Assembly (NCBI GenBank): GCA_002269645.1
Contig: NIVC01002737.1
Location: 80,217-144,216 of the forward strand
Reading direction: 5' to 3'
Length of the DNA stretch: 64,000 nt
Source: Macrostomum lignano
Lineage: Eukaryota
Position numbers and translations under genes: made by a program. This document shows positions 5,663 to 25,985 of this stretch, in pieces. The notes below the pieces were generated by a model that worked only from the letters and a program-made list of their open reading frames with translations, searched no databases and had not been told where the DNA came from. Positions within the stretch are counted from its first letter, which is position 1, and every line of letters begins with the position of its first letter.

Positions 5663-8600
5663 ATGGCCTGCGACCTGCTAATGCCATCATCGCAAGGCGG
5701 AGCCAACAATCCAGCCTTCTCGCCGCTGACCCTGTTCGAGTGCACCATCACCAACGCACAGATGCTCATCGACTCCATGGCCGACCGGGACCTGATGCAG
5801 GCCCTGAAGATCGCCGGCGGCCTCCACACCCACATTGTCGGCGTCATCGAGCCGCGCTACGATCGCGTCTGTCAGCGTAGCGACGAGCACGAAGCCTGCT
5901 GCCAGGCGGCTGCCGCGGCTGCAACATCAGCAACGCTGACTCCTTCCAAGTCAGCTGGCGCCGCCAACTCGGCCAGTTTCGGAGCCAATGGCAGCGGCGC
6001 CGATTTGAAATCTGCCGTAGCTGCCGCCGCCGCCGCGGCCGGCCTGAAGTCCGAGTCTACCGGCTCTGTGGCAGCTGGCGGCGTCAAGTCCGAGCTGCTG
6101 GACCCCGACGCGTTCCCCGAGGAAGACGAAGAGGACTGTCTGATCCTGGAGGAGGACTGCTCCTTCCCCGCCGCTGCTGCCGCAATGTCGCCGTCGGCCT
6201 CCAGCTCCGCCAGCCGAAAGCGCCACCGCCCGTTGTCGCCCTCGTCAAGTCTGCAGATGCCGGGCGGAGCCAGCGCGGGTTTTCCTGGCAGCGCCCAGCA
6301 ACTGGCCGAGTGCAAAAATGCGCTCAGGATGGCCTATAAAAATATTAAAGGCAACGGGCCGCACCTGTTTGACTTTGCGCTGTCGTGAGTTGCTCTGCAA
6401 TTCTTGCATCCCTTGTAGAGGGATTCGGTGGGGTATGCGCGGTTGAGGGATTCAGTGGGGTATGAGCGTGTGAGGGATTCAGTGGGGTATGAGCGTGTGA
6501 GGGATTCAGTGGGGTATGAGCGGGTGAGGGATTCAGTGGGGTATGAGCGTGTGAGGGATTCAGTGGGGTATGAGCGTGTGAGGGATTCAGTGGGGTATGA
6601 GCGTGTGAGGGATTCAGTGGGGTATGAGCGTGTGAGGGATTCAGTGGGGTATGAGCGGGTGAGGGATTCAGTGGGGTTGGGTATGAGCGGGTGAGGGATT
6701 CAGTGGCGTATAAGCGTGTGAGGGATTCAGTGGGGTATGAGCGTGTGAGGGATTCAGTGGGGTATGAGCGGGTGAGGGATTCAGTGGGGTATGAGCGTGT
6801 GAGGGATTCAGTGGGGTATGAGCGTGTGAGGGATTCAGTGGGGTATGAGCGTGTGAGGGATTCAGTGGGGTATGAGCGTGTGAGGGATTCAGTGGGGTAT
6901 GAGCGTGTGAGGGATTCAGTGGGGTATGAGCGGGTGAGGGATTCAGTGGGGTATGAGCGTGTGAGGGATTCAGTGGGGTATGAGCGTGTGAGGGATTCAG
7001 TGGGGTATGAGCGGGTGAGGGATTCAGTGGGGTATGAGCGTGTGAGGGATTCAGTGGGGTATGAGCGGGTGAGGGATTCAGTGGGGTATGAGCGTGTGAG
7101 GGATTCAGTGGGGTATGAGCGTGTGAGGGATTCAGTGGGGTATGAGCGGGTGAGGGATTCAGTGGGGTATGAGCGTGTGAGGGATTCAGTGGGGTATGAG
7201 CGGGTGAGGGATTCAGTGGGGTTGGGTATGAGCGGGTGAGGGATTCAGTGGCGTATAAGCGTGTGAGGGATTCAGTGGGGTATGAGCGTGTGAGGGATTC
7301 AGTGGGGTATGAGCGTGTGAGGGATTCAGTGGGGTATGAGCGGGTGAGGGATTCAGTGGGGTTGGGTATGAGCGGGTGAGGGATTCAGTGGCGTATAAGC
7401 GTGTGAGGGATTCAGTGGGGTATGAGCGTGTGAGGGATTCAGTGGGGTATGAGCGTGTGAGGGATTCAGTGGGGTATGAGCGTGTGAGGGATTCAGTGGG
7501 GTATGAGCGTGTGAGGGATTCAGTGGGGTATGAGCGTGTGAGGGATTCAGTGGGGTATGAGCGGGTGAGGGATTCAGTGGGGTATGAGCGGGTGAGGGAT
7601 TCAGTGGGGTATGAGCGGGTGAGGGATTCAGTGGGGTATGAGCGTGTGAGGGATTCAGTGGGGTATGAGCGTGTGAGGGATTCAGTGGGGTATGAGCGGG
7701 TGAGGGATTCAGTGGGGTTGGGTATGAGCGGGTGAGGGATTCAGTGGCGTATAAGCGTGTGAGGGATTCAGTGGGGTATGAGCGTGTGAGGGATTCAGTG
7801 GGGTATGAGCGTGTGAGGGATTCAGTGGGGTATGAGCGTGTGAGGGATTCAGTGGGGTATGAGCGGGTGAGGGATTCAGTTGGGTTGGGTATGAGCGGGT
7901 GAAGGATTCAGTGGCGTATAAGCGGGTGAGGGATTCAGTGGGGTTGGGTATGAGCGGGTGAAGGATTCAGTGGCGTATAAGCGGGTGAGGGATTCAGTGG
8001 GGTATGAGCGTGTGAGGGATTCAGTGGGGTATGAGCGTGTGAGGGATTCAGTGGGGTATGAGCGTGTGAGGGATTCAGTGGGGTATGAGCGGGTGAGGGA
8101 TTCAGTGGGGTTGGGTATGAGCGGGTGAGGGATTCAGTGGCGTATAAGCGTGTGAGGGATTCAGTGGGGTATGAGCGTGTGAGGGATTCAGTGGGGTATG
8201 AGCGTGTGAGGGATTCAGTGGGGTATGAGCGTGTGAGGGATTCAGTGGGGTATGAGCGGGTGAGGGATTCAGTGGGGTTGGGTATGAGCGGGTGAAGGAT
8301 TCAGTGGCGTATAAGCGGGTGAGGGATTCAGTGGGGTTGGGTATGAGCGGGTGAAGGATTCAGTGGCGTATAAGCGGGTGAGGGATTCAGTGGGGTATGA
8401 GCGGGTGAGGGATTCGGTGGGGTATGAGCGGCACAGTGAGGGATCCATTGGGGTCTGAGCAGCACAATGAGGGATTCAGTGGGATATGAGCAGCACAGTG
8501 AAGGATTCAGTGGGGTATGAGCAGCACAATGAGGGATTCAGTGGGGTATGAGCAACACAGTGAGGGATTCAGGGGTCTGAGCAGCACAGTGAGGGATTCA

Positions 8601-11600
8601 GTGGGGTATGAGCAACACAGTGAGGGATTCAGGGGTCTGAGCAGCACAGTGAGGGATTCAGTGGGGTATGAGCAACACAGTGAGGGATTCAGGGGTATGA
8701 GCAGCACAGTGAGGGATTCAGTGGGGTATGAGCAGCACAGTGAGGAATTCAGTGGGGTATGAGCAGCACAGTGAGGGATTCAGTGGGGTATGAGCAGCAC
8801 AGTGAGGGATTCAGTGGGGTATGAGCAGCACAGTGAGGGATTCAGTGGGGTATGAGCAGCACAGTGAGGGATTCAGTGGGGTATGAGCAGCACAGTGAGG
8901 GATTCAGTGGAGTATGAGCAGCACAGTGAGGGATTCAGTGGGGTATGAGCAGCACAGTGAGGGATTCAGTGGGGTATGAGCAGCACAGTGAGGGATTCAG
9001 TGGAGTATGAGCAGCACAGTGAGGGATTCAGTGGGGTGGTGAGGCAGTGCAAGAACCCAACCAATCGCATTACATTTCATTACAATTTCACCAACCAATC
9101 GCAACGCCGCCGCAGCTTCCACGACCCGTCCAATCAGAGAGTGTCCGAGCAGATTATCGCTGCGGCCCGCCAGCAGCTGAGCCACCTGCGCCTGCCTAAC
9201 GATGTCTGGTGGAGTGAGTTGGTTATTTAATAATTTAAACAAATGCATAAGTGACTACTCGCAACCAGTTAAAGTAATAGCATTAGCAAATGTATTAAGT
9301 GAATATTGATGTCGGCCCTCTCCTTGCATTTGGTGACTTCGCACCGTGATCCAGTTTGATTGCCAGCTACAATAAGAGTTTTCATATCTTACCTGAGTAT
9401 GGCTAGTAGCTCGTTCGTTTCCCATGGGACGGCAGCGCAACTGTCCCGTCATTAATTGATTCCGCCTCTATGAATTCATAATTAACTAATTATCTATGCT
9501 CTTCTTAACTGTTAGCAGTACAGTATGCATTTCAGTTTGTTGATTTTGCTTCCCACTATCTGAGGTGCAGGTTTTATTGGTTATTTAAACCGACTGCAGG
9601 GTCGCGTGCTGATTATTGATACAAGCTGTGCAATTAGTTGTACTTTTATTGCTGATCAGCTGCGTGCTGCCGTTCAACTGAAACTTTGTTTAGGCCAAGC
9701 CGGCAACCTGTGTAAGCGAATCAAAATCGAGCTGAACAATAACAAGCGGCGCAATCGGCAGTTTCGCTGCAGGCAGAAGGTTGTTCTCCAACTGATTATT
9801 CTATTGGCTACCTAGCTAGCGAATCCCTACCAGCTGCAATGCTGAGCAGCCAGCCTCCCACATCCCCTAATGAGCCAGCCTCCCACATCCTTAATGAGCC
9901 AGTCTACCTCACCCCTAATGAGCAGCCATCCTCCCACATCCCTAATGAACCAGTCTCCCACATCCCCTAATGAGCCAGTCTCCCTCACCCCCTAATAAGC
10001 AGCCAGCCTACCATATCCCCTAATGAGCCAGCCTCCCACATCCCTTAATGAGCAGCCAGCCTCCAACACCCCATAATGAGCAGCCAGCCTCCCACACTCC
10101 CTAATGATCCAGCCTCTCACATCCCTTAATGAGCAGCCAGCCTCCCACACTCCCTAATGATCCAGCCTCCCACACCCCCTAATGAGCAGCCAGCCTCCCA
10201 CACCCCTAATGATCCAGCCTCCCACACCCCCTAATGAGCAGCCAGCCTCCCACACCCCCTAATGATCCAGCCTCCCACATCCCTTAATGAGCAGCCAGCC
10301 TCCCACACTCCCTAATGAGCCAGCCTCCCACACCCCCTAATGAGCAGCCAGCCTCCCACACCCCCTAATGATCCAGCCTCCCACACCCCCTAATGAGCAG
10401 CCAGCCTCCCACACCCCCTAATGATCCAGCCTCCCACACCCCCTAATGAGCAGCCAGCCTCCCACACCCCCTAATGATCCAGCCTCCCACATCCCTTAAT
10501 GAGCAGCCAGCCTCCCACACTCCCTAATGAGCCAGCCTCCCACACCCCCTAATGAGCAGCCAGCCTCCCACACCCCCTAATGATCCAGCCTCCCACACCC
10601 CCTAATGAGCAGCCAGCCTCCCACACCCCCTAATGAGCAGCCAGCCTCCCACACCCCCTAATGAGCAGCCAGCCTCCCACACCCCCTAATGAGCAGCCAG
10701 CCTCCCACACCCCCTAATGAGCAGCCAGCCTCCCACACCCCTAATGAGCAGCCAGCCTCCCACACCCCTAATGAGCAGTCAGCCTCCCACACCCCCTAAT
10801 GAGCAGCTAGCCTCCCACACTCCATAATGAGCCAGCCTCCCACACCCCCTAATGAGCAGCCAGCCTCCCACATCCCCTAATGAGCAGCCATTGAGTCTTG
10901 TCTTCTTAGCTTAGTTTATTGTGGCAGTGATAACAATCGGGGAAAGTTCTCAATGCCCTTATGAAGTGAAGCGGATCAAACTGCGGTGAAGCGGTGAAGT
11001 CTCGGGCAGTTGCTTGCTCAGCTCCGACAGTCATACCGCAGAGCCAATCAAATGCGTTTTTTAGAATCGCTCAACAGCAGCGGCGTGTTCGGTCAAGCGA
11101 GGCACAATTACTTAGCCAAATTTCGAATGCTTAAAATTAAACGGAAAAGCAACGTAGGTTTATTTGAGACTGTGTGCTCACTGAGCTGCGTGTGTCTGCG
11201 AACTCTGCTAGGTCATGGTTATAACTAGGGGGACAGGCAAATAAACTGACTTGCTGTGCCAGCGCTGTTAACCTGTAACCAAGTGTTAACCCGTAAACAT
11301 AGAAAGGCATGCCACTCGCCTTGCAGACAATAAAGCTGCTCGAGCATTTTATGCCGAGGAGAAAAATCGCGTGCTCACTCGAGTCCGAATGCGCCGCGTT
11401 GCCGGGCAGAAGTCTGTAAGGAGTCGCATCTGCCTTCCCTTCCCATCTTGTTTTTCTGAGTTGCAGTTTTGTCGCTTCTAATAGTTGCTTGATCAGCTGT
11501 TGCCACGGGCGTCTGGAGTTCCCGCTGGACTGGACTGGGGCGAGCATGGGGGGGGGGGGTTAGTCAAATTGGGTATATATTCAAAAGGTATTCATGACGA

Positions 11601-14600
11601 CACTCAAAGATCCCAGTGTCCAGTCCAGATAAGCTCCAGTGGTCCCTGGCCCATTCGCCCATTGTTCATCATGTTAATCGTTGTTATACGCTTTTATAAA
11701 AATTCGTAGCGATTCGGTGGCAAAGAGTTGGCCCATATCGACTAGAGTGCAGCTAGGCAGTATCTATGCAATAATAGCACACTGGATTGGACCGCTTACT
11801 GACCTTATTGCAGAGCACTGCTTCCCCAGCTTGTACGATGAGTTAACCAAATATGACAAGCATAGGGAGCGAATGAAGCACAGAATGCGAGCTCGCAGGC
11901 TTATGAACAGCGTACGTATTATAAATAACTATAACTATTTGGCAGTGCAAGCCTGCTTGTTTCATAAATCACTGCCTAATCGCGCATCAAACGCAAGGTC
12001 CGCGGCTAACACTTCCCATGGTTTCTTAGCGCAATCTTAATCCTCTTTGGGGTTGGGGATTTCTTTTTAAACTGTTTCAGGCCTGTCCAGTGCTGCGTTT
12101 GCTGATCTGCAGCACAGCATATTGGAGAAGCGGCACTATACTAAGCATTCTGTGCGGAAATTCCGCAGCAAACTCAAGGTAAACACTGCCCTGGTCCGGA
12201 TTGGGTCTTTGATATTAGCTTTTGCTTCTGCAGTCCTGTGTGTTCACCGTGTGTTCCGTGTTTGTTCTGGGCTATTAAAAGAGCAAGCTTTAATAGCCAA
12301 GATCTGGTCTGACAGTCGAATCCCACTGTCAAGTCCCAATCCCATAGTCAGAAGTCCCAATCCCGCAGTCAGAAGTCCCAATCCCATAGTCAGAAGTCCC
12401 AATCCCGCAGTCAGAAGTCCCAATCCCATAGTCAGAAGTCCCAATCCCGCAGTCAGAAGTCCCAATCCCATAGTCAGAAGTCCTAATCCCGCAGTCAGAA
12501 GTCCCAATCCCATAGTCAGAAGTCCCAATCCCGCAGTCAGAAGTCCCAATCCCATAGTCAGAAGTCCCAATCCCGCAGTCAGAAGTCCCAATCCCGCAGT
12601 CAGAAGTCCCAATCCCGCAGTCAGAAGTCCCAATCCCATAGTCAGAAGTCCCAATCCCGCAGTCAGAAGTCCCAATCCCATAGTCAGAAGTCCCAAATCC
12701 AATGTCAAGTCCCAATCCCATAGTCAGAAGTCCGAATCCCGCAGTCAGAAGTCCCAATCCCACAGTCAAAAGTCCCAATCTCACAGTGGGAAGTCACAAT
12801 CTCACAGTCAGAAGTCACAATCTCACAGTCGTAAGTCACAATCCCACTGTCAGAAGTCCCAATCTCACAATCAGAAGTCCCAATCCCACAGTCAAATCCC
12901 AAGCCCATAGTCAGAAGTCACAATCCCATAGTCAGAAGTCACAATCCCATAGTCAGAAGTCACAATCCCACAGTCAGAAGTCACAATCACACAGTCGGAA
13001 ATCAATCCCGCAGTCAGAAGTCCCAATCTCACAGTCAGAAGTCACAATCCCATAGTCAGAAGTCACAATCCCATAGTCAGAAGTCACAATCCCACAGTCA
13101 GAAGTCACAATCACGCAGTCGGAAATCACAATCCCGCAGTCAGAAGTCCCAATCACACAGTCGGAAATCACAATCCCGCAGTCAGAAGTCCCAATCACAC
13201 AGTCGGAAATCACAATCCCGCAGTCAGAAGTCCCAATCACACAGTCGGAAATCACAATCCCGCAGTCAGAAGTCCCAATCACACAGTCGGAAATCACAAT
13301 CCCGCAGTCAGAAGTCCCAATCGCACAGTCGGAAATCACAATCCCGCAGTCAGAAGTCCCAATCACACAGTCGGAAATCACAATCCCGCAGTCAGAAGTC
13401 CCAATCACACAGTCGGAAATCACAATCCCGCAGTCAGAAGTCCCAATCGCACAGTCGGAAATCACAATCCCGCAGTCAAAAGTCCTAGCCCTACTAATTT
13501 CAAGTTAATCTCTACTGACTAATCCCTATTAAATTTATTCTGATAAATTAATAGGTTGCATGCCTGTTGGAGGTGCATAGCAACCCGGTACGATGGTAAC
13601 AAATTTCACGCAGCATCAAAAGCAAGGCCCGGCCGCCCCAGTTTAGCCAGCTCCGTTAGAGATTGAATCCAGTGTTTCAGGACCGCCCGGCAGTAACACC
13701 TGCGCCGTGCGCTGCATTGCAGGCTGCGCTGAGGAATTGTGGCTGCTATTGAAGAAAGCTGTGGCGCACAAGCGCGAAAGAGACGTCTTCTATCAGCGCA
13801 AGGGGCGCCTGAAAAATAAAGTAAAACCATGCAATCTATGCTCATTTGCTTACTTTTTCCACCGGGTTTTATCCTTTGTTGTAAATTAACCAATTGGGTC
13901 GGTAAGACGCATATAGGCTTTTAGGAAGTAGGTGCTAATCAGGGACTTTTCTGCTCTCATTTATACGACTGACATGATGCCTCATCTTTAACATTGATTG
14001 GGCTGCGTGATATTACACCTCGCTGCCTCCCGCTCTCCGTCTCCCCTTTCCAACCTCCATCTCCCCCTCCCAGCCTCCCTCTCTACCCCCTCCCAGCCTC
14101 TCTACCCCCTCCCAACCTCTCTCTCTACCCCCTCCCAGCCTCTCTCTCTACCCCCTCCCAGCCTCCCTCTCTACCCCCTCCCAGCCTCCCTCTATCTCCC
14201 GCTCCCAACCTCCATCTCTACCCCCCTCCGAACCTCCCTCTCCATCTCCCTCTCCCGACCTACCTCTCCATCTCCCTCTCCGTGTCCCACACGCCACATA
14301 CAGCTCCTGTTTTCTGACCCATCAGAAACTGGCCAGACGGCAGAAGAGCTTCGAACTGCTAGCAACCAGTTTATCCACCGACAAGTTCGACAAGTACCGC
14401 ATCATTTTGTCCCGGGACTACACTTCGTCTGACGAGGAAGCCGATGTTGGCAGCGGCGGTGCCAGCGCGAGCGGCGATGACGGAGGAGGCGGCGGAGGCG
14501 TCCTTCGAGTCCGCGAGCTGCCCTGGGAATCTGCGGAGCTGCGCGAGATGAAGCAGCAGCTGGACTCTATCTATCTGGAGAATTGCGCAACTCAGAAGCA

Positions 14601-14703
14601 GGCGCAGCAGTTGCGCAGCACAGTGCGCGACTCCGGCTGCGTCAGCGGCAGGACTCCACCTGCCAACTGCCCGTCCTGGGCGCTGTCTAATGAGTACCGC
14701 TAA
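5663..14703 (+). CDS. Gene A: uncharacterized basic, probably nuclear protein with a mutually exclusive exon cluster (427-431 aa)
   Basis: Exon 5663-6384 (phase 2, GTGAGT), exon 9116-9213 (cag|CTTC, ends A|GTGAGT, phase 1), one variant exon from 9694-13820, last exon 14326-14703 (cag|AAACTG, KLARRQKSFELL..YTSSDEE..LRVRELPWES..LD..PSWAL). Phases join; every constitutive exon aligns with gene B. C-terminal motif recalls C14orf93-like proteins (from memory, not searched). Confidence 0.85.
6421..9035. repeat. Intronic minisatellite, 27-bp unit changing to a 31-bp unit
   Basis: GAGGGATTCAGTGGGGTATGAGCGTGT to about 8420, then GAGGGATTCAGTGGGGTATGAGCAGCACAGT; fills intron 1 of gene A. Confidence 0.97.
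9312..9367 (+). promoter_or_regulatory. Putative docking site for the gene A exon cluster
   Basis: CCTTGCATTTGGTG (9322-9335) and GACTTCGCACCGTGATCCAGTTTGATTGCC (9335-9364) are reverse-complementary to segments upstream of five variant exons. Confidence 0.7.
9694..9779 (+). CDS. Gene A variant exon A1 (86 nt, weak donor)
   Basis: ttag|GC..AAG|gttgtt; (S)QAGNLCKRIKIELNNNKRRNRQFRCRQK; partly aligns with A6 (A..L....K....KR....F..R); no convincing selector. Confidence 0.5.
9845..10890. repeat. Minisatellite of about 25-29 bp inside the gene A exon cluster
   Basis: CCTAATGAGCAGCCAGCCTCCCACACCC variants. Confidence 0.95.
11065..11153 (+). CDS. Gene A variant exon A2 (89 nt)
   Basis: ttttttag|AA..AAC|gtaggt; (K)SLNSSGVFGQARHNYLAKFRMLKIKRKSN; selector at 10975-11001. 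Confidence 0.75.
11327..11415 (+). CDS. Gene A variant exon A3 (89 nt)
   Basis: ttgcag|AC..TCT|gtaagg; (N)NKAARAFYAEEKNRVLTRVRMRRVAGQKS; selector GGCAAATAAACTG at 11236-11248. Confidence 0.75.
11814..11911 (+). CDS. Gene A variant exon A4 (98 nt)
   Basis: ttgcag|AG..AGC|gtacgt; (K)HCFPSLYDELTKYDKHRERMKHRMRARRLMNS; weaker selector at 11768-11787. Confidence 0.75.
12081..12178 (+). CDS. Gene A variant exon A5 (98 nt)
   Basis: tttcag|GC..AAG|gtaaac; (S)LSSAAFADLQHSILEKRHYTKHSVRKFRSKLK; selector CATCAAACGCAAGG at 11985-11998. Confidence 0.8.
12330..13480. repeat. 21-bp minisatellite inside the gene A exon cluster
   Basis: CAGAAGTCCCAATCCCATAGT and variants. Confidence 0.96.
13723..13820 (+). 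CDS. Gene A variant exon A6 (98 nt)
   Basis: ttgcag|GC..AAA|gtaaaa; (S)CAEELWLLLKKAVAHKRERDVFYQRKGRLKNK; selector CATCAAAAGCAAGG at 13614-13627. Confidence 0.8.
14030..14280. repeat. CT-rich degenerate repeat before the last exon of gene A
   Basis: CTCTCTACCCCCTCCCAGCCTC units. Confidence 0.85.
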
Positions 14704-14854
14704 TGCTTGCCAGACTGATTAGGTGGCGAGCTGGTTGACTATTCGCGAACTATAGGGTTACTCGCGCCGTTTACCCAACTAACTGTGACGAATTTAGGGC
14801 CAACCATTCTTTACTGCAATTGTTTCTGACACCCAGTTTTGTTCGTGTTCTCTT

Positions 14855-15265
14855 CCATCCATGGGATACCCGCCACACCTGGTCTCTCCCATCCATGGGA
14901 TACCGCCACACCTGGTCTCTCCCATCCATGGGATACCGCCACACCTGGTCTCTCCCATCCATGGGGTACCCGGCACACCTGGTCTCTCCCATCCATGGGG
15001 TACCCGGCACACCTGGTCTCTCCCATCCATGGGGAACCCGGCACACCTGGTCACTCCCATCCATGGGGAACCCGGCACACCTGGTCTCTCACATCCATGG
15101 GGAACCCGGCACACCTGGTCTCTCCCATCCATGGGGAACCCGGCACACCTGGTCTCTCCCATCCATGGGGAACCCGGCACACCTGGTCTCTCCCATCCAT
15201 GGGGTACCCGGCACACCTGGTCTCTCCCATCCATTGGGAACCCGGCACACCTGGTCTCTCCCATC
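14855..15265. repeat. Minisatellite of about 34 bp downstream of gene A
   Basis: CATCCATGGGGAACCCGGCACACCTGGTCTCTCC, about 12 copies. Confidence 0.95.
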
Positions 15266-15854
15266 GAGTTCGTCATACTGTCAATGTTGACTTTTCGAAT
15301 CAAAATTTGAATAGCTCTCCAATGCTGGCACAGAGGCTCCATGCGATTTCAATACCTGGGGAAAAGTATTTGCTGCATTTAAGCTTCAATATTTGCACTG
15401 CGAGTAGTTGCGCAATGTGTCTCTTATCTATAATATTTTACTTGTTGCTGCTATCCCAGTCAGTAAATATTATTGCAATTAGCGAACTTTCATAAACCCC
15501 ACATTGTCACATGTCTCTGTTCACTTGTTAATCTGTAATAAGTTTGCCTGTATTCTGTTTTCATGTGTTTATTATTTTTTGCTGTTGTTTAACTGCCCCC
15601 AGTCATTTCCGCAGCTTTGCTTTTGCGTTAACACACTGTCTCGTTCTGTACATGCTATAAAATACGATAATTACATAACAATATGATAATAATAAATTTA
15701 TTTGCTAAAGAATTTTTCATTCTTTTTCTGTTGTTGCCGATTCATTATCGGAAAAATGCAGTTGTATTACTGTTCTGAAGCTTTGCTCATGTAGTGAAAT
15801 AGACCAGGCTTTATTATTATAGCATAGTGTAGTGCATAGTGCATGTTTAGTTCC

Positions 15855-16280
15855 TGGGATTCCCCTCCAGCACCCATCCCCCTGACTGCCTACCCCACAG
15901 CGTACATTGAATGTCTGGGATTCCCCTCCAGCACCCACCCCTCACTGCTTACCCCACTGCGTACATTGAGGGCCTGAGATTCCCCTCCAGCACCCACCCC
16001 TCACTGCCTACCCCACTGCGTACATTGAGTGTCTGAGATCCCCCTCAAGCACCCACCCCTCACTGCCTACCCCACTGCGTACATTGAATGTCTGGAATTC
16101 CTCTCCAGCACCCACCCCTCACTGCCTACCCCACTGCGTACATTGAATGTCTGGAATTCCTCTCCAGCACCCACCCCTCACTGCCTACCCCACTGCGTAC
16201 ATTGAATGTCTGGAATTCCTCTCCAGCACCCACCCCTCACTGCCTAACCCACTGCGTACATTAAATGTCTGGGATTCCCT
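15855..16280. repeat. 59-bp minisatellite upstream of gene B
   Basis: About 7 copies of CATTGAATGTCTGGAATTCCTCTCCAGCACCCACCCCTCACTGCCTACCCCACTGCGTA. Confidence 0.95.
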
Positions 16281-16341
16281 TCTAGCGCAATGAGTCAAGT
16301 CTGCAATTACGCTTTTGCATGTAGCCTTTCACCACCAAACA

Positions 16342-19300
16342 ATGACGGACATTCTGCCTAGCCACTCCATCACCGGGGGCGTTTTTTCACCCCTGACCCT
16401 GTTCGAGTCCACCATCACCAACGCGCAGATGCTGGTGGAGTCCATGGCCGAGCGGGAGCTGTTCTCCGCCCTGCGCATCATCGGCGGCCTGCACAGCCAC
16501 GTTGTCCAGGTCATGGAGCCGCGCTACGGCCGCCTGTGTGAGCGCAGCGACCACCTCGCCGAGCTGGAGGCCGCCGGCCTGGATCAAAGCCACGGCTCCG
16601 CTGCCGAGGCTGCCGAAGCCACTTCATCCTCGTCGGCTGCTGCCGCTTCTAGCAGACGCTTCGCTAAGGAGGAGAAACTGCTAGGCGACACCGACACGGA
16701 GCAGCAGTGCACCTCAGTGCTGCGCTCCGCCCTTGGCACCATCAAGGTATTTCCTATTCACCGCGTTGTGATGTCGGCGCCTTTCCTATTATATTTGATG
16801 TCGCGGACTTTCCCATCTCCTCTGATGTCGCCGCCTTTCCCATCTCCTCTGATGTCGCCGCCTTTCCCATCTCCTCTGATGTCGCCGACTTTCCCATCTC
16901 CTCTGATGTCGCCGCCTTTCCCATCTCCTCTGATGTCGCCGACTTTCCCATCTCCTCTGATGTCGCCGACTTTCCCCACTCCTTTGATGTCGCCGCCTTT
17001 CCCCACTCCTTTGATGTCGCCGCCTTTCCCGTCTCTTTGATGTCGCCGTCATTCTCTTCTCTTCTGGTGCTCAACAGATGGAGAACTTTGACGCGGCCGG
17101 CGCTTCCGCCCTGCCATCCGCCGCTAACGCAAACTTCGGCGAACAGCTGGAGCCGCCGGAGATCTTGGAAGAGGACGCCGATGATGAAGACGAGGATGAC
17201 GATTGCGTCATCACCGACTACTTCGACGACAGCAGCTTTGGCGCTAGCGGCATCGGCGCCTTCGGTGGCGTCGGCCCGTCGCCCGCCAAAATGCCGCGAC
17301 TCGGCGGGGTCGGCGGCGGCGCAGGCGACAGCTCGATGCCGGCCGAGTGCAAGACCATCATGCGCCGGGCTTACAAAGCTCTCAAGGGCAACGGGCCGCA
17401 TCTGTTTGACTTCAGCCTGCCGTGAGTCTCCTTAGCTGGCACGCCGGTTACCAGTCCCGGCCTCAGTCTGGAAACGCCTCTAGAAATCTTCGACCTTACA
17501 TCAGCCAAAATGCAAACCCTGGTTAGGCTACCCTGAACAAACCCTGAGCCACCCCTGAACAAACCCTGAGCCACCCCTGAACTCAAGTCTGAGCCATTCC
17601 CTGAACTCAACCCTGAGCCACCCCTTGAACTCAACCCTGAGCCACCCCCTGAACTTAACCCTGAGCCACCCCCTGAGCTCAATCCTGAGCCACCCCCTGA
17701 ACTCAACTCTGAGCCACCCCCTGAACTCAACTCTGAGCCACCCCCTGAACTCAACTCTGAGCCACCCCCTGATCTCAACCCTGAGCCAGCCCCTGAACTC
17801 AACCCTGAGCCACCCCTTGAACTCAACCCTGAGCCAGCCCTGATCTCTGTGGACTCAAGAGCGCCGCCTCCCCCACCGCCGGCCCCACAGCTTCTCTTCG
17901 GAGCACAACCAGCGAGTTGCCACCCGCGTCACCGCCAAAGCCAAGGAGATGGCCCAGGGCAAGGGCTGGCCGAGGACATTTGGCTGAGTGAGAATCAGTG
18001 CCGCTTTTTGTGCATTTAGATATAAAGTTTGATAAGTTGATAAATGATGTGTAGAATACAACTCTTAATTAAGATTACACTGCGTATGAAGTAGTTAATA
18101 GAATAGATTAATCGTAAAATCTTATCTTAGTTATATTCTATTAATACTACTCGCACAGACTAGCCAAGTAGTATCTATAGGCTGCGCTAATGTGCTAATT
18201 TTACCTGCCCTCAAGTCTGGAAACGTCGCAAGTAATTTGGGTACAAGAAATATTTAATAACTAATTTTAATCTCCTTTCAACTTGGGCTGCTTCTAATAG
18301 GTTCATGTCTGACTATTTGAGACACAATCAGAGACTTAATTATGCATTAATTATCTAATTAATTATTTGCATTATTTCTATTGCCGAACTGCCTACAGTT
18401 AGCAGGTGGTAAAGCGATGTAATGCTACTGAGACTGTTGCCTATTCGACGTTTCTTATTGGCCATTTAGAATGAGTTTTGAATAAAGCTGAACTGCTCAA
18501 CTCACACTTAGAACTGCCCTACGGCTCAAGGCTAGTCTACCTGTACCTGGATTTTCGGCAAAAGATGAGGTTTAAGCATCGATGCGTTGTAAGCTTTGCT
18601 GGTCATCTCTGTTTCTATCGGTTTTTTGTGTCACACCAGCCTCCACTGTCCTGCTTGCGATGTTCGCCCAGACTCGCGTCTTTATAACAGGCTTTGCTCA
18701 AAACAGTTTTGCCAATATGTTTCTGGCCTCCAATTTGCCCAGGGCTGCCCAAAGAGTCCAGAGTAAATCGGATTCACTGCACCTATGGAGCCCGTCTGCG
18801 CGCCAAGCACAGGCAGATTGTGAGTTCCCTCCCCCTGTGCCCTCCCCTGTACCTTGATGAGCCGCCTCTCCCCCTGTGCCTTTGATGAGCCGCCTCTCCC
18901 CTTGTGCCTTTGATAAGCCGCCTCCCTCCCCCTGTGCCTTTGATAAGCCGCCTCCCTCCCCCTGAGCCTTTGATGAGCCGCCTCTCCCCCATGTGCCTTT
19001 GATCAGCCGCCTCTGCCCCTGTGCCTTTGATGAGCGGCCTCCCTTCCCCTGAGCCTTTGATAAGCCGCCTCTCCCCTGAGCCTTTGATGAGCCGCCTCTC
19101 CCCTTGTGCCTTTGATAAGCCGCCTCCCTCCCCTGAGCCTTTGATAAGCCGCCTCTCCCCTTGTGCCTTTGATAAGCCGCCTCCCTCCCCTGAGCCTTTG
19201 ATGAGCCGCCTCTCCCCCATGTGCCTTTGATCAGCCGCCTCTGCCCCTGTGCCTTTGATGAGCGGCCTCCCTTCCCCTGAGCCTTTGATAAGCCGCCTCT

Positions 19301-22239
19301 CCCCTGAGCCTTTGATGAGCCGCCTCTCCCCTTGTGCCTTTGATAAGCCGCCTCCCTCCCCCTGTGCCTTTGATAAGCCGCCCCCCTCCCCTGAGCCTTT
19401 GATGAGCCGCCTCTCCCCATGTGCCTTTGATCAGCCGCCTCTGCCCCTGTGCCTTTGATGAGCGGCCTCCCTTCCCCTGAGCCTTTGATAAGCCGCCTCT
19501 CCCCTGAGCCTTTGATGAGCCGCCTCTCCCCTTGTGCCTTTGATAAGCCGCCTCTCCCCCCTGTGCCTTTGATAAGCCGCCTCCCTCCCCCTGAGCCTTT
19601 GATGAGCCGCCTCTCCCCCATGTGCCTTTGATCAGCCGCCTCTGCCCCTGTGCCTTTGATGAGCGGCCTCCCTTCCCCTGAGCCTTTGATAAGCCGCCTC
19701 TCCCCTGAGCCTTTGATGAGCCGCCTCTCCCCTTGTGCCTTTGATAAGCCGCCTCCCTCCCCTGAGCCTTTGATAAGCCGCCTCTCCCCTTGTGCCTTTG
19801 ATAAGCCGCCTCCCTCCCCCTGAGCCTTTGATAAGCCGCCTCTCCCCTTGTGCCTTTGATGAGCCGCCTCTCCCCTTGTGCCTTTGATAAGCCGCCTCCC
19901 TCCCCTGAGCCTTTGATAAGCCGCCTCTCCCCTTGTGCCTTTGATCAGCCGCCTCTCCCCCTGTGCCTTTGATAAGCCGCCTCCCTCCCCCCTGAGCCTT
20001 TGATGTCCGCCTGTCTTTGCGCTGGGTTAAGCAAGTCAGTGATAAATAAGTCTACAATTTTACAATCAATTCGACGTTTCCCGTCTGGACAGTTGGCTAA
20101 AAACTCTCGCCTATAAGTGCACCCAGAGTCTGAGGCGATTTTCCCGCAGGACTGCCGAAAGTCGGCCGCCTGTCCGAGATTTTCTTTGTTTTCAGAAGTC
20201 AAATCCGAAACAAGCTGCGACTCGTTGTACGCAATTGTCACAGTTCCGCACTTTCTCTGTTGTGTTGGGAATTTTTCTGTCAAAAATTTTCTACGATGCA
20301 TATCGGCGTTTCCTGACTAAAGTTGAGCAGATTTGGCTTTGCGTAGCAAATTTCTACCAAAGTCGCTATCGTCTACTCACGCCAGTCAGTAGTGTATTGA
20401 GGAGTGCTCGGCTCACTTTTTACATCTATTTTTAGATCTGCCTTCCAGCGGCAAAATCAGGAAGATATTCACCGATTTTAGGCAGAAGATGCGCGCTAGG
20501 CTGGTGCTTGGCGTGCGTGCCCGATTTTCTCTGTTTAGGTTTTTATTTAATTTTTTGACGTTTCCCGGCTGCCTGTAAGCTCACTGCTGTGTGAGGCTTG
20601 TGCTTGCTAACACTTGACCTGACTGCCCCGCTGTTGCAGGGCTGCCACACACCGGCCGGCCGACCGCCATATTCAACGATTTTAGAAAGAAAATGCGCAC
20701 CAGGTTTCGGATGGATGTTAGTGATAATTGCTTTAGGTGTTTCTATGGGGCTCTGCGAATTCCGCTTCAGTGCTGAGACGTTTCCTGACAATGGCCGGGT
20801 GCTGCAATTGTGCGAACCCCCCCGTGTCCGTCACGCCACCGACTGCCGCTTGCAGATCTGCCGCCCAAGGCCCGCCTGCTCGCCATTTTTGGCGACTTTA
20901 AAAAGAAAAGGCGATTCAAGTCCCGCTCTGATGTCAGTGCAGCTGGGTGGCTTTTCGCCTCATCTGTGTTGTTTGTTTTTCCCCATTTTTGATTGCTCTG
21001 CCTTGGCGGGGTAGGCAGGGTAGCTAGATTGGTAGACAGACAAATTGATTGATTGACAGACAGGCCGGCAGGCAAACAAACACTAAGATAGGCAAACAGA
21101 CAGACACAGATACGCTAGCAGACCAACGTAATTGCGCGGTGCACCGTGGGGGGGTGTGAGGCTGTACATTGCTGGCACTGTGGGGCCCCGGGCCAGCAAC
21201 CTTTACCCGCTGTAACTTATCGCTCAGCCTGTTACAATGCCAGACGTTTCCTGACAACTCAGACTGTGAATTGTACAGCACACAGAATTGCCAGCAAACA
21301 GTTACCCATCGCGCGCGTTGCAGAGCTGCCCATGAACAGCCGATTGATCTGCATATTCGCCGACTTTAGAAAGAAGATGCGCAACAGATTTCGTTCAGAT
21401 GTTGGTCCGGGTTCAAAACTCGATTTCAGAGCTTTCAGGCTGCGATATGAAAATATTTGTTACATGCTATTGGAACTACTGTACTGACTGCTGATCAGTA
21501 GTCAATGCCATCATGATATGAAAAATGATTCCTCTCTGATTTGCTTCTGTTTAAACTGTACTGAGCTGTCGAAAAGCCACTGCATGACCTGAGCTATGAC
21601 TGAAAAGCCACTGCATGACCTGATCTATGACTGAAAAGCCACTGCATGACCTGATCTATGACTGAAAAGCCACTGCATGACCTGAGCTATGACTGAACAG
21701 CCGCTGTATGAGATCTGAGCTATGACTGAAAAGCCACCACTCTATGACCTGAGCTATGACTGAAAAGCCACTGTATGAAGGCTATGACTGAAATGAATCT
21801 CAAAGCAGCCAGCTCTCGCAGTCTTGCCTCGCTTCCCCCGAACTTGCAGAAGCTGAACCGCCGTCAGAAAAGTTTCGAACTCGTGGCCACCAGCCTGACC
21901 TCCGACGAGCTGGAGAAGTTCCGCGTGATCCTCACCAGGGAGTACACCAGCTCGGATGAGGAGTGCGGCTCCGGCGGCGCCGACCAGCTGCGGGTCCGCG
22001 AGCTGTCCTGGGAGTCCGACGAGGTGAAGCGGCTGAAGCGGCAGCTGGACCAGGTTTACGCGGACAACTGCGCCACCACCAAGCAGAAGCAGCAGCTGGC
22101 CAGGTGCATCCGCGACCCCGTCCGATCGCGGTCGCAGCGGCCGCCGCCCGAGGCTGCGCCAAGCTGGGCTTTGAAGGCGCCGCTGCAGAAGAACCGGCCG
22201 GGAGACGGCGCTCCGCCGCCCGCCTCCGGCACAGCCTGA
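16342..22239 (+). CDS. Gene B: paralog of gene A with seven 77-nt mutually exclusive exons (437 aa if one missing base in exon 3 is restored)
   Basis: Exons 16342-16746, 17078-17421, 17891-17987, one 77-nt variant exon, 21850-22239. Shares FSPLTLFE.TITNAQML..SMA.R.L..AL.I.GGLH, ECK..R.AYK..KGNGPHLFDF.L, F....NQRV and KL.RRQKSFEL.ATSL..YTSSDEE..LRVREL.WES with gene A. Exon 3 is 97 nt vs 98 nt in gene A. Confidence 0.8.
16790..17045. repeat. 27-bp minisatellite in gene B intron 1
   Basis: TGATGTCGCCGCCTTTCCCATCTCCTC. Confidence 0.95.
17530..17840. repeat. 24-bp minisatellite in gene B intron 2
   Basis: CTGAACTCAACCCTGAGCCACCCC. Confidence 0.95.
18212..18232 (+). promoter_or_regulatory. Putative docking site for the gene B exon cluster
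   Basis: CAAGTCTGGAAACGTCGCAAG, between the constitutive donor (17988) and the first variant exon; reverse complement of the GACGTTTCC(TGAC) motif seen before all seven variant exons. Confidence 0.85.
18512..18588 (+). CDS. Gene B variant exon B1 (77 nt)
   Basis: cttag|AA..GTT|gtaagc; (K)LPYGSRLVYLYLDFRQKMRFKHRCV; selector CGACGTTTC at 18446-18454. Confidence 0.85.
18743..18819 (+). CDS. Gene B variant exon B2 (77 nt)
   Basis: cccag|GG..ATT|gtgagt; (R)LPKESRVNRIHCTYGARLRAKHRQI; selector CTTGCGATGTTCGCCCAGACT from 18654. Confidence 0.85.
18825..20000. repeat. Minisatellite of about 28-30 bp inside the gene B exon cluster
   Basis: GCCTTTGATAAGCCGCCTCTCCCC(TT)GT/GA variants. Confidence 0.96.
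20150..20226 (+). CDS. Gene B variant exon B3 (77 nt)
   Basis: cgcag|GA..GTT|gtacgc; (R)LPKVGRLSEIFFVFRSQIRNKLRLV; selector CGACGTTTCC at 20072-20081. Confidence 0.85.
20436..20512 (+). CDS. Gene B variant exon B4 (77 nt)
   Basis: ttttag|AT..GGC|gtgcgt; (N)LPSSGKIRKIFTDFRQKMRARLVLG; selector CGGCGTTTCCTGACT at 20304-20318. Confidence 0.85.
20640..20716 (+). CDS. Gene B variant exon B5 (77 nt)
   Basis: ttgcag|GG..GAT|gttagt; (R)LPHTGRPTAIFNDFRKKMRTRFRMD; selector GACGTTTCCCGGCT at 20557-20570. Confidence 0.85.
20856..20932 (+). CDS. Gene B variant exon B6 (77 nt)
   Basis: ttgcag|AT..GAT|gtcagt; (N)LPPKARLLAIFGDFKKKRRFKSRSD; selector GACGTTTCCTGAC at 20777-20789. Confidence 0.85.
21324..21400 (+). 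CDS. Gene B variant exon B7 (77 nt)
   Basis: ttgcag|AG..GAT|gttggt; (K)LPMNSRLICIFADFRKKMRNRFRSD; selector GACGTTTCCTGAC at 21243-21255. Confidence 0.85.
21575..21795. repeat. Short tandem repeat (about 31 bp) before the last exon of gene B
   Basis: ATGACCTGAGCTATGACTGAAAAGCCACTGC variants. Confidence 0.9.
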
Positions 22240-22630: not shown

Positions 22631-23169
22631 GCCTCCGCTCAGTCGCAGTTCGCAAGCGCGGACCAGTATTCGAACCCGGGGCAACGAGTTATTGAACTGT
22701 TATTAAAAGCCGCTCTGTGCCCTCCTGTTTGCGCGTCTGCAATCCCCTGTGCCGCTGTTCAATGTACATTGACTTGTGTTTTATTGAATATTTTCTGTTC
22801 GTGGCAGACTTTGCATTTTTATTTTTGTAAACTATTTGAGTATCAATATATTTGCTTTGTCAATCACCCATCAGTTAGCATGGACTGTTTTATTTTTCAT
22901 TAATATGCACCCGCGTTTAATCACAATGTCCAGGCTCTGTTGAACTGCAATTGAATGTCTTTAACCAGGCAAATACAGAACCGCCAACGCATTAACAACT
23001 GCTTATTCAATTATCAATTGCTGTTGCGAAATGATCGAATTCTTATCGATAAATATCTTGATGAGCTGGCTGCTTTTTTTTCAATTGCAAAAGACATTTT
23101 TGCAATTGCATTATAAAAAATATCAGGTTAGTTTGTGGACTCAGATATCATTGGGAATCACCAAAATGA

Positions 23170-25505: not shown

Positions 25506-25985
25506 GATCTTTCGGCCTCATCAATCGCCATTGGACATTCGAACTTCTGAGAACATTGAGAAGTCAGTCCTACGTTACACAATTTTAAGCGGCCCACATA
25601 CAGGTTAGACACCCCAAAGACTGTTTGCGAGCCCTGTTTGTCCAATGCTGTTTATTTAACTTTCTTCGCGCGGACTGCGAGCCCAGAGCGCTGAGTTGCG
25701 CTGCTGGGTAACTGCTGAGATGAATTTTGGCTTTGCTTGCTCACGGCTCAGCAGCGCTCAGCTTCTGCATGCGATGCAGAAGGCAAATATAATTTCTTAA
25801 TTCATAGCAGCAGAGAATTGAGTACAAGCTCGAGATTTGAGCCGAGCAAATTCAAGTGTCTTCGGTGTTGCCGAGCCCCATGGCAACCTCGGAATACACA
25901 ATTCGGAGTTTGAGTTTGAGTTGAAAAATACTGCGCACTGCACGGCAGCGACGGCAGAGCATAGAAGCAGAGCAGAAGCAGCAAG

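What the first reader, a model, noticed from the sequence alone, without database searches (positions are those of the whole stretch)
9116..22239. The variable exon swaps a basic amphipathic helix, possibly giving interchangeable DNA-recognition helices
All 13 variant exons encode 26-33 aa with a hydrophobic i/i+3/i+4 pattern followed by Lys/Arg clusters (WLLLKKAVAHKRER, IFADFRKKMRNRFR). They are framed by constant F....NQRV...I.A.A......P.D.W and KL.RRQKSF..SSDEE..VREL.WES segments. This resembles the C-terminal recognition helix of BEN/MADF/SANT-like helical DNA-binding domains and the C14orf93-like family, judged from memory only. If correct, two genes would give up to 13 DNA-binding specificities, rather than the cell-surface diversity Dscam provides.
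Basis: inference. Interest (0 to 1): 0.8.

Follow-up and report, generated by a model that had tools for sequence, protein, structure and literature searches.

The report
Swappable basic-helix exons in flatworm genes
Two neighbouring genes of the flatworm Macrostomum lignano each carry a row of alternative small exons (6 and 7), one of which is spliced in per mRNA to supply the Arg/Lys-rich middle of a long helix in a conserved animal protein domain of unknown function; the exon swapping is real, but nothing supports the idea that the helix reads DNA.

Summary
The window is Macrostomum lignano DNA with two tandem paralogous genes, A (5663-14703) and B (16342-22239). Between a constant exon ending "P.D.W" and a last exon starting "KL.RRQKSF" lie 6 (A) and 7 (B) cassette exons. 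All have AG/GT boundaries, the same phases (1 to 0) and lengths of 3n+2 (77, 86/89 or 98 nt; 26-33 aa), and all are strongly basic (net +6 to +9).

Transcript-derived GenBank proteins use one variant each (A1, A6). Skipping all variants, or including two, gives a premature stop. Gene B also has a Dscam-exon-6-like docking site (18217-18233) complementary to a selector 66-134 nt upstream of each of its 7 variants. This site is conserved in a diverged paralogue.

AlphaFold2 (pLDDT 90.8) places the variable exon inside one long helix.

The helix, the basic charge and the interchangeability hold. No Pfam, PDB-sequence or Foldseek match to BEN, MADF, SANT or any DNA-binding fold was found. The only recurrent weak hit is Pfam DUF4616 (3 of 37 members, below threshold). 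The module belongs to an uncharacterised family seen in six other invertebrate genera. DNA binding is untested.

The parts
5663..6384 (+). Gene A exon 1: ATG, N-terminal two-helix domain, low-complexity acidic linker and the start of the conserved module (AECK...GNGPHLFDFAL). Donor TC|GTGAGT, phase 2.
   Evidence: identical to the N-terminus of PAA55553.1
9116..9213 (+). Gene A constant exon (98 nt): (S)FHDPSNQRVSEQIIAAARQQLSHLRLPNDVWW. Donor A|GTGAGT, phase 1.
9694..9782 (+). Variant exon A1 (86 or 89 nt; the donor could be at 9779 or 9782): SQAGNLCKRIKIELNNNKRRNRQFRCRQK(V).
   Evidence: used in the transcript-derived PAA80363.1 (P0004), which then reads into the intron
11065..11153 (+). Variant exon A2 (89 nt): KSLNSSGVFGQARHNYLAKFRMLKIKRKSN.
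   Evidence: conserved in L001 and L002
11327..11415 (+). Variant exon A3 (89 nt): NNKAARAFYAEEKNRVLTRVRMRRVAGQKS.
11814..11911 (+). Variant exon A4 (98 nt): KHCFPSLYDELTKYDKHRERMKHRMRARRLMNS.
12081..12178 (+). Variant exon A5 (98 nt): SLSSAAFADLQHSILEKRHYTKHSVRKFRSKLK.
   Evidence: used in UniProt model A0A1I8H8D8 (P0106)
13723..13820 (+). Variant exon A6 (98 nt): SCAEELWLLLKKAVAHKRERDVFYQRKGRLKNK.
   Evidence: used in the transcript-derived PAA55553.1 (P0105), which is identical to my splice
14326..14703 (+). Gene A last exon: KLARRQKSF...SSDEE...LRVRELPWES...PSWALSNEYR, then the stop codon.
16342..16746 (+). Gene B exon 1 (ATG; N-terminal helical domain).
17078..17421 (+). Gene B exon 2 (acidic linker; AECKTIMRRAYKALKGNGPHLFDFSL).
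17891..17987 (+). Gene B constant exon. It is 97 nt here, with one C missing in GGCTGGCC-GAGGAC at 17964-17977. It is 98 nt and intact (…GKGWPEDIWL) in L001 and L002.
18217..18233 (+). Docking site CTGGAAACGTCGCAAGT in the intron after the gene B constant exon.
   Evidence: the same 17 nt are conserved in the B-like paralogue (L005 near 15885-15901), where the introns are otherwise unalignable
18444..18461 (+). Selector for B1 (TTCGACGTTTCTTATTGG).
18512..18588 (+). Variant exon B1 (77 nt): KLPYGSRLVYLYLDFRQKMRFKHRCV.
18654..18674 (+). Selector for B2 (CTTGCGATGTTCGCCCAGACT).
18743..18819 (+). Variant exon B2 (77 nt): RLPKESRVNRIHCTYGARLRAKHRQI. It is the counterpart of the variant used in paralogue model A0A1I8JJF2.
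20070..20089 (+). Selector for B3 (TTCGACGTTTCCCGTCTGGA).
20150..20226 (+). Variant exon B3 (77 nt): RLPKVGRLSEIFFVFRSQIRNKLRLV.
20302..20318 (+). Selector for B4 (ATCGGCGTTTCCTGACT).
20436..20512 (+). Variant exon B4 (77 nt): NLPSSGKIRKIFTDFRQKMRARLVLG.
20554..20571 (+). Selector for B5 (TTTGACGTTTCCCGGCTG).
20640..20716 (+). Variant exon B5 (77 nt): RLPHTGRPTAIFNDFRKKMRTRFRMD.
20775..20791 (+). Selector for B6 (GAGACGTTTCCTGACAA).
20856..20932 (+). Variant exon B6 (77 nt): NLPPKARLLAIFGDFKKKRRFKSRSD.
21241..21257 (+). Selector for B7 (CAGACGTTTCCTGACAA).
21324..21400 (+). Variant exon B7 (77 nt): KLPMNSRLICIFADFRKKMRNRFRSD.
21850..22239 (+). Gene B last exon: KLNRRQKSF...SSDEE...LRVRELSWES...PSWALK..., then the stop codon.

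Best explanation
The region holds two tandem paralogous genes of Macrostomum lignano. They belong to an uncharacterised protein family with a C-terminal module of about 210 aa, also found in brachiopods, echinoderms, a hemichordate and an octocoral.

In the octocoral homologue one small exon, ending just before 'KL.RR', encodes a basic helix (shown). In Macrostomum this exon has been tandemly duplicated into arrays of 6 (gene A) and 7 (gene B) cassettes (inferred).

Exactly one cassette is spliced between the constant exon (phase 1) and the last exon (phase 0). Every cassette is 3n+2 nt long, so skipping all of them, or taking two, shifts the frame into an early stop (shown by translation). 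In gene B the choice is most likely made by competing RNA pairings. A single docking site downstream of the constant exon can pair with only one of seven selector sequences, each lying upstream of one cassette. This is the architecture of Dscam1 exon 6 (sequence shown; mechanism inferred).

At the protein level the cassette forms the middle of one long alpha-helix that runs on into the constant KL.RRQKSFEL. Its first half carries fixed hydrophobic positions on one face, probably packing on the domain. Lys/Arg sit at fixed positions in the second half. The residues that differ between cassettes lie mostly on the opposite face (inferred).

Splicing would therefore exchange the exposed surface of a basic helix and give up to 13 isoforms. 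These most plausibly differ in which polyanionic ligand (RNA or DNA) or acidic partner they bind. Which ligand it is remains unknown.
For: - **Gene models and reading frames:**
- **Species and transcripts:** PAA55553.1 is identical to the A6 isoform; PAA80363.1 uses A1; A0A1I8H8D8 uses A5; A0A1I8JJF2 (a B paralogue) uses a single xLP cassette. The GenBank annotation is RNA-seq-derived (PMC5730564).
- **Same break point in other paralogues:** other M. lignano paralogue models diverge from each other exactly after 'P.D.W'.
- **Frame rule:** skipping all cassettes, or including two, gives a stop 36-47 codons after the constant exon.
- **B cassettes are homologous while their flanks are not.** The flanks are unalignable except for the selector. 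Synonymous sites are saturated, with dN/dS about 0.2-0.45 among B1 and B4-B7.
- **Docking and selectors, motif counts:** ACGTTTCC occurs 5 times in the window against 1.0 expected. Four copies lie upstream of B cassettes and one, in the opposite orientation, lies in the first intron.
- **Docking and selectors, pairing:** the docking 9-mer pairs upstream of 6 of 7 cassettes, and a 10-mer with one mismatch pairs upstream of 7 of 7. The next best k-mer reaches 3-5. The summed duplex energy is -155 kcal/mol against -98 +/- 7 for shuffled docking sequences.
- **Conservation in a paralogue:** the same 17-nt docking core, and selectors 84-99 nt upstream of 77-nt cassettes, are present in the diverged B-like paralogue L005.
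- **Structure:** AlphaFold2 gives pLDDT 90.8 and pTM 0.76. The variable exon is residues 63-95 of helix 58-110. In the B-like paralogue it is helical apart from a two-residue break.
- **Position classes in B cassettes:** the framework positions and the variable face are shown.
- **Charge:** net +6 to +9.
- **Ancestral single exon:** in Dendronephthya the segment is one exon, with the same intron position before KLARR.
Against: - No read-level RNA evidence was available. Mutual exclusivity rests on gene models, the frame rule and the RNA-pairing architecture.
- Gene A has no detectable docking/selector system, and its six cassettes are barely alignable with one another.
- Only three of the 13 window cassettes (A1, A5, A6) are seen in public models of these two genes. 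Some cassettes could be unused.
- Gene B is frameshifted in this copy.
- Exposure of the variable face is inferred from helical geometry and conservation, because the model coordinates could not be inspected.
- Amphipathicity is statistically weak.
- The ligand is a guess based on charge alone.
Confidence: 0.72

Rival explanations
1. The module is a BEN/MADF/SANT-like helical DNA-binding domain, the cassette is its recognition helix, and each isoform reads a different DNA sequence.
For: The cassette is helical and basic. Residues that vary between B cassettes cluster on one helix face. The proteins have an N-terminal helical or coiled-coil part plus acidic linkers, as many nuclear factors do.
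Against: No Pfam match to BEN, MADF, Myb/SANT, bZIP or bHLH was found in any member, even at E up to 10. The PDB profile search gave a best E of 0.38. Foldseek against the PDB gave no hit below E = 0.48 and no DNA-binding fold among the listed matches. A 53-residue continuous helix is unlike the short third helix of SANT or MADF domains. The Lys/Arg positions are the conserved ones, which suits generic polyanion contact rather than base reading.
Confidence: 0.12
2. The cassette is an arginine-rich RNA-binding or nuclear/nucleolar-targeting segment. Isoforms would differ in RNA target or subnuclear address rather than in DNA sequence specificity.
For: Runs such as KRRNRQFRCRQKKLARRQK (A1) and KHRERMKHRMRARRL (A4), and the R.K.R.K.R pattern of the B cassettes, resemble arginine-rich motifs (the comparison rests on my own knowledge). 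Six of 13 cassette-plus-junction sequences match a classical mono- or bipartite NLS pattern.
Against: Seven of 13 match no NLS consensus. No RNA-binding domain was detected. The segment is predicted to be part of a folded helix with conserved hydrophobic positions, not a free peptide.
Confidence: 0.2
3. The arrays are largely redundant or decaying duplicates. One or two cassettes per gene carry the function, and the others are rarely used or are spliced only into nonsense-mediated-decay (NMD) substrates. The diversity would then have no specific role.
For: Only A1, A5 and A6 are seen in public models of these two genes. The gene A cassettes are highly diverged and lack selectors. The region is full of minisatellites and duplications.
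Against: All 13 cassettes keep open frames, AG/GT boundaries, the same phases and 3n+2 lengths, although synonymous sites are saturated. All 7 B cassettes keep a selector. The same array architecture persists in a diverged paralogue pair.
Confidence: 0.15
4. The 'exons' are chance open frames or gene-prediction artefacts in repeat-rich intron DNA.
For: Older models (P0021, P0001) string several cassettes together or read into introns.
Against: Transcript-derived CDSs match my splices exactly. The B cassettes are homologous to each other. The octocoral homologue shares the intron position immediately before 'KL.RR'.
Confidence: 0.02

Closest known systems
Drosophila Dscam1 exon 6 cluster (docking site / selector sequence model of mutually exclusive splicing)
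   Same: Both have a tandem array of homologous cassette exons of equal length, one docking site in the intron after the constant exon, and a complementary selector upstream of every cassette, so that only one pairing can form. In gene B this holds for 7 of 7 cassettes, and the docking site is conserved in a paralogue. Background on selector sequences comes from the abstracts of PMC6071210 and PMC4691838.
   Different: The host is a flatworm, not an arthropod. There are 7 cassettes rather than 48. The product is a 26-aa basic helix in a probably intracellular protein of unknown function, not an Ig half-domain of a surface receptor. Gene A has an array without a recognisable docking/selector system. 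No trans-acting factors are known.
Drosophila serpent (srp, GATA factor), whose mutually exclusive exons change a zinc finger
   Same: This is a precedent for mutually exclusive exons, governed by long-range RNA pairing, that change the nucleic-acid-binding part of a regulator (title and abstract of PMC4691838; details from my own knowledge).
   Different: srp has two alternatives and a known DNA-binding fold. Here there are 6-7 alternatives and no recognised DNA-binding fold.
Pfam DUF4616 (PF15394), the C14orf93/RTFC family
   Same: It is the only Pfam family hit by more than one member. P0062 residues 81-195 align to profile positions 316-424 of 524, a stretch that covers the Asn motif, the variable-equivalent region and the KL.RR start.
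   Different: The score is below threshold (18.6 bits against 27), and only 3 of 37 members hit. No Macrostomum member hits. C14orf93 has no known DNA-binding role (paper list).
Arginine-rich motif helices and bZIP/bHLH basic regions
   Same: They are basic alpha-helices that contact nucleic acid. The best, non-significant PDB sequence hit was the MITF HLH-zipper region (E = 0.38).
   Different: There is no leucine zipper or HLH after the basic stretch, no Pfam match, and the segment is embedded in a larger folded module.

Membership tests
Mutually exclusive exon cluster with competing RNA structures (Dscam1 exon 6 type) | Tandem array of homologous cassette exons with the same phase and length between two constant exons | tested here: met
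   Gene B has 7 exons of 77 nt, all starting xLP, in phase 1 to 0. Gene A has 6 exons of 86/89 or 98 nt in the same phases.
Mutually exclusive exon cluster with competing RNA structures (Dscam1 exon 6 type) | Exactly one cassette per mature mRNA | tested here: inconclusive
   Every well-formed public model has one cassette (A1, A5, A6; B paralogues). Zero or two cassettes give a premature stop. No read-level RNA data could be examined.
Mutually exclusive exon cluster with competing RNA structures (Dscam1 exon 6 type) | A single docking site next to the constant exon, conserved in evolution | tested here: met
   This holds for gene B only. CTGGAAACGTCGCAAGT at 18217-18233 is identical as a 17-nt core in the paralogue L005, within otherwise unalignable introns. 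It is not found for gene A.
Mutually exclusive exon cluster with competing RNA structures (Dscam1 exon 6 type) | A selector complementary to the docking site next to every cassette | tested here: met
   Gene B has selectors for 7 of 7 cassettes, 66-134 nt upstream. The summed duplex energy is -155 kcal/mol against -98 +/- 7 for shuffled docking sequences.
BEN domain (Pfam PF10523) | Match to the family HMM, or the BEN fold | tested here: not met
   There was no hit at E up to 10 in any scanned member. This includes P0111, which UniProt names 'BEN domain-containing'. Foldseek against the PDB gave nothing below E = 0.48.
MADF and Myb/SANT-like DNA-binding domains | Match to the family HMMs, or the three-helix SANT fold with its recognition helix | tested here: not met
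   No Pfam hit. No PDB sequence or fold match. The cassette lies in a 53-residue helix, not a short third helix.
DUF4616 / C14orf93 (Pfam PF15394) | Match to the family HMM above the gathering score | tested here: inconclusive
   3 of 37 members hit, best E = 8.5e-4, 18.6 bits against a cut-off of 27, and the match falls on the corresponding part of the module. A profile search recovered no protein annotated with this domain. A profile-profile test (HHpred) was not available.
bZIP / bHLH | Basic region directly followed by a leucine zipper or helix-loop-helix; HMM match | tested here: not met
   No Pfam match. MITF gave E = 0.38 in the PDB profile search. The helix ends about 15 residues after the basic stretch.
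The uncharacterised invertebrate 'ECK...N...W...KL.RRQK...SSDEE...WES...S.R.PP..P.WA' module family | Full-length alignment to the ~210-aa module with the invariant Asn, Ser-Ser, Trp, Ser.Arg, Pro and Trp | tested here: met
   phmmer found 104 relatives, and module profile alignments have E of 1e-38 to 1e-73. Named members come from Lingula, Acanthaster, Patiria, Apostichopus, Glandiceps and Dendronephthya, all labelled 'uncharacterized'.

The most novel reading that the evidence does not exclude
A flatworm-expanded family of nuclear regulators uses RNA-structure-guided, Dscam-like mutually exclusive splicing to exchange the ligand-contacting face of a basic helix in a previously undescribed fold. 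Each gene would then encode a small repertoire of factors with different DNA or RNA target specificities. This would amount to an isoform code for nucleic-acid recognition rather than for cell-surface recognition.
Probability: 0.15. Interest if true: 0.85.

Novelty: new variant of a known kind. Interest (0 to 1): 0.62.

Why it matters
Large arrays of mutually exclusive exons with a docking/selector RNA architecture are, to my knowledge, described almost only in arthropod genes. Here the same logic appears in a flatworm, in at least two paralogous genes, with the docking site conserved while the introns have diverged beyond alignment. This suggests either independent invention or a much wider distribution of the mechanism.

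The exchanged segment is a basic helix inside a conserved module that no database describes. The alternative exons therefore mark which part of this unknown domain is functionally tunable.

M. lignano is transgenic-tractable (PMC5730564). Docking-site mutations and tagged isoforms could therefore be tested directly.

Tried and rejected
- **Pfam on constant pieces, full-length paralogues and 37 module members:** no family reached its cut-off. The scattered coiled-coil hits lie in the N-terminal parts of non-flatworm members.
- **PDB sequence profile, Foldseek against the PDB for both models and against BFVD:** no significant match.
- **Profile search with a subgroup alignment to reach C14orf93 proteins:** it returned only unnamed relatives.
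- **dN/dS between assembly copies L001, L002 and the window:** the copies are about 99% identical, so there is no power.
- **dN/dS among B cassettes:** synonymous sites are saturated, so this gives only a rough sign of constraint.
- **Eisenberg hydrophobic-moment test:** not above shuffles.
- **Docking/selector search in gene A:** upstream and downstream models, G-U pairs allowed or not, and a search for conserved islands against the A-like paralogue found nothing convincing. The candidate at 9422-9450 is not better than GC-rich background.
- **Strand and phase control for chance basic open frames:** confounded by overlapping candidates, so it was not used.
- **Genomic context of two non-flatworm relatives:** uninformative.
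- **Literature searches for the gene identifiers and for Macrostomum mutually exclusive splicing:** nothing found.
- **UniProt names of family members ('BEN domain-containing' and others):** rejected as evidence, because they are mutually inconsistent and Pfam does not find any of them.
- **Structure prediction with the frame-repaired gene B isoform:** A natural B-like paralogue (P0008) was used instead.
Full report
**What the window is.** The last exon of the downstream gene matches Macrostomum lignano proteins (91% identity to A0A1I8J016). A full-length splice of the upstream gene is identical to GenBank PAA55553.1 (BOX15_Mlig000635g2). Two further copies of the locus in assembly GCA_002269645.1 (L001 and L002) are about 99% identical in unique sequence. 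This fits the known redundancy of that assembly (PMC5730564).

**Gene structure.**
- There are two tandem paralogues on the + strand.
- Gene A: exon 1 at 5663-6384, constant exon at 9116-9213, six cassettes, last exon at 14326-14703.
- Gene B: exons at 16342-16746 and 17078-17421, constant exon at 17891-17987, seven cassettes, last exon at 21850-22239.
- The finding's coordinates (9116-22239) run from the first base of the gene A constant exon to the stop of gene B.
- Every cassette has AG and GT boundaries, begins in phase 1, ends in phase 0 and is 3n+2 nt long: 77 nt seven times in B, and 86/89, 89, 89, 98, 98 and 98 nt in A.
- A scan of the gene B cluster finds these seven cassettes and no other of the type.
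- Each single-cassette splice of gene A is an open frame of 427-431 aa.
- Joining the constant exon directly to the last exon, or including two cassettes, gives a stop 36-47 codons later.

**One defect.** The gene B constant exon here lacks one C of a CCC run (17964-17977). It therefore reads ...GKGWPRTFG* instead of ...GKGWPEDIWL. Both other copies have the intact 98 nt. This is either a homopolymer assembly error or a dead allele.

**Are the cassettes real, alternative exons?**
- The GenBank annotation of this assembly was built from RNA-seq-guided transcript assemblies (PMC5730564).
- PAA55553.1 uses cassette A6 alone.
- PAA80363.1 uses A1 and then reads into the intron.
- UniProt A0A1I8H8D8 uses A5.
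- A0A1I8JJF2, a B paralogue, uses a single 'NLPKDSRINYLHSNFGTKIRAKYRIS' cassette.
- Models of other paralogues differ from each other exactly after the 'P.D.W' point: P0007/P0110 against P0111 and P0109, and P0010/P0112 against P0113.
- The seven B cassettes align with each other, while their flanks do not, apart from one upstream element.
- Synonymous sites between B cassettes are saturated, while non-synonymous divergence is lower (dN/dS about 0.2-0.45 among B1 and B4-B7).
- A second tandem pair, A-like plus B-like, lies on another contig (L005). It has arrays at the same place, including five 77-nt B-type cassettes.
- In the octocoral Dendronephthya the homologous segment is one small exon, and the intron just before 'KLARR' is at the same position.
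- The arrays therefore arose by duplication of an ancestral exon.

**Splicing control.**
- The element shared upstream of the B cassettes is (G)ACGTTTCC. It occurs five times in the 64-kb window against 1.0 expected. Four copies lie upstream of cassettes. The fifth is in the opposite orientation, in the intron after the constant exon.
- That site, CTGGAAACGTCGCAAGT at 18217-18233, can pair with a sequence 66-134 nt upstream of each of the seven cassettes.
- It is the clear outlier among all k-mers of that intron: 6 of 7 cassettes for a 9-mer, and 7 of 7 for a 10-mer with one mismatch.
- The summed duplex energy is -155 kcal/mol against -98 +/- 7 for shuffled docking sequences.
- The same 17-nt core sits about 77 nt after the constant-exon donor (at 15808) of the B-like paralogue in L005. 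There, selectors lie 84-99 nt upstream of two cassettes, and a third selector lies upstream of a further cassette. The introns are otherwise unalignable.
- This is the docking/selector architecture known from Dscam1 exon 6 (background in the abstracts of PMC6071210 and PMC4691838).
- Gene A shows no such system.

**The protein.**
- A phmmer search of 1.8 billion representatives found 104 relatives.
- The C-terminal ~210 aa form one conserved module: ECK..LR..YK.L...FDF......N..V........W [variable] KL.RRQK......SSDEE....RVR.L.WES...K..LD......S.R.PP..P.WA. It aligns end to end with proteins from Lingula, Acanthaster, Patiria, Apostichopus, Glandiceps and Dendronephthya, and with many unnamed metagenome and SRA-assembly proteins. 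All named members are labelled 'uncharacterized'.
- No Pfam family reaches its cut-off on any member.
- The only family hit more than once is DUF4616 (PF15394): 3 of 37 members, best E = 8.5e-4, 18.6 bits against 27, on the corresponding part of the module.
- From my own knowledge, PF15394 is the C14orf93 family. It is unproven, and it says nothing about DNA binding.
- The UniProt names of several members (BEN-, FATC-, Copine-, Rab-GAP-domain-containing and others) contradict each other, and Pfam confirms none of them.

**Structure.**
- AlphaFold2 on the gene A isoform A6 module, with a 37-sequence alignment, gives mean pLDDT 90.8 and pTM 0.76.
- The predicted elements are helices 2-18, 34-50, 58-110 and 113-122, a disordered acidic loop around the SSDEE region, and then a small alpha/beta part.
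- The cassette is residues 63-95. It lies wholly inside the 53-residue helix and continues into the constant KLARRQKSFELL.
- In the full-length B-like paralogue P0008 the cassette is helical too, with a break of two residues after its fifth residue and pLDDT 77-87.
- Foldseek finds no significant relative in the PDB or BFVD, and no DNA-binding fold is among the listed matches.
- A PDB sequence profile search has its best hit at E = 0.38.

**What varies.**
- All 13 cassettes have net charge +6 to +9, with Lys/Arg mostly in the C-terminal half.
- I compared ten B-type cassettes: seven from the window and three from paralogues.
- Positions 2 (Leu/Ile), 3 (Pro), 8, 11, 12, 15 and 19 (hydrophobic, all on one helical face) are conserved in class. 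So are positions 7, 16, 18, 20, 22 and 24 (Lys/Arg).
- The positions that change (4-6, 9, 10, 13, 17, 21, 23, 25, 26) lie mostly on the opposite face.
- This pattern suggests a fixed scaffold with a changeable exposed surface.
- Statistical support for amphipathicity is weak.
- Only 6 of 13 cassettes match a classical nuclear-localisation pattern.

**Verdict.**
- The mechanism best supported is mutually exclusive splicing that exchanges the middle of a basic helix in an undescribed conserved module. Gene B has a Dscam-like docking/selector system.
It remains a minority possibility.
- A role in binding some polyanion or acidic partner is plausible from charge alone.
- The feature is a new variant of a known kind of system.

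Noticed in passing
window 18217-18233, with selectors at 18444-18461, 18654-18674, 20070-20089, 20302-20318, 20554-20571, 20775-20791 and 21241-21257: Gene B has a Dscam-exon-6-like docking site and seven selector sequences. The 17-nt docking core is conserved in a diverged paralogue (L005, near 15885-15901). I found no literature describing such a system in flatworms.
   Followed up: yes
window 17964-17977: The gene B constant exon lacks one C of a CCC run, compared with the two other assembly copies. This gives a frameshift and an immediate TGA. It is either an assembly indel or a dead allele.
   Followed up: yes
window 9214-14325 (gene A cluster): Gene A has six cassettes but no detectable docking/selector pairing, and no intronic island is conserved with its A-like paralogue. 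How exclusivity is achieved here, beyond the frame rule, is unexplained.
   Followed up: partly
window 6418-9037, 9843-10890, 12319-13485, 14063-14268, 14849-15265, 15854-16286, 16796-17066, 17531-17847, 18854-20012, 21571-21793, 23167-25510: Most introns of both genes, and the intergenic DNA, hold a different minisatellite (periods 21-59 nt, up to 92 copies). Array lengths differ between the three assembly copies.
   Followed up: no
L005 (NIVC01000521.1), 4991-10504 and 12914 onwards: The tandem arrangement of an A-type gene followed by a B-type gene is itself duplicated elsewhere in the genome, with cassette arrays in both members. The pair therefore predates the duplication.
   Followed up: partly
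L004 (Dendronephthya gigantea RSEI01001087.1), 12430-12540 and 12698-13093: The octocoral homologue encodes the basic-helix segment as one small exon and has the same phase-0 intron immediately before 'KLARR'. This intron position is ancient, and the exon is single-copy there.
   Followed up: partly
cassette lengths, window genes A and B: Cassette lengths of 77, 89 and 98 nt differ by 4 and 7 codons, which is roughly one and two helical turns. This would keep the helical register between the constant flanks. Variable segments in other paralogues have other lengths, so this may be coincidence.
   Followed up: no
public protein records of the family (for example A0A1I8HGZ8, A0A1I8H8D8, A0A1I8I2Z3): The UniProt names ('BEN domain-containing', 'FATC domain-containing', 'Rab-GAP TBC domain-containing' and others) are mutually inconsistent, and Pfam scans of the same sequences find none of them. 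Older models (P0021, P0001) concatenate several cassettes or retain introns.
   Followed up: yes
window 57608-59050 (- strand) and 59948-61906 (+ strand): There are long ORFs that look like the RNase H/reverse-transcriptase part of a retroelement and like a DNA-transposase. They seem unrelated to the finding.
   Followed up: no
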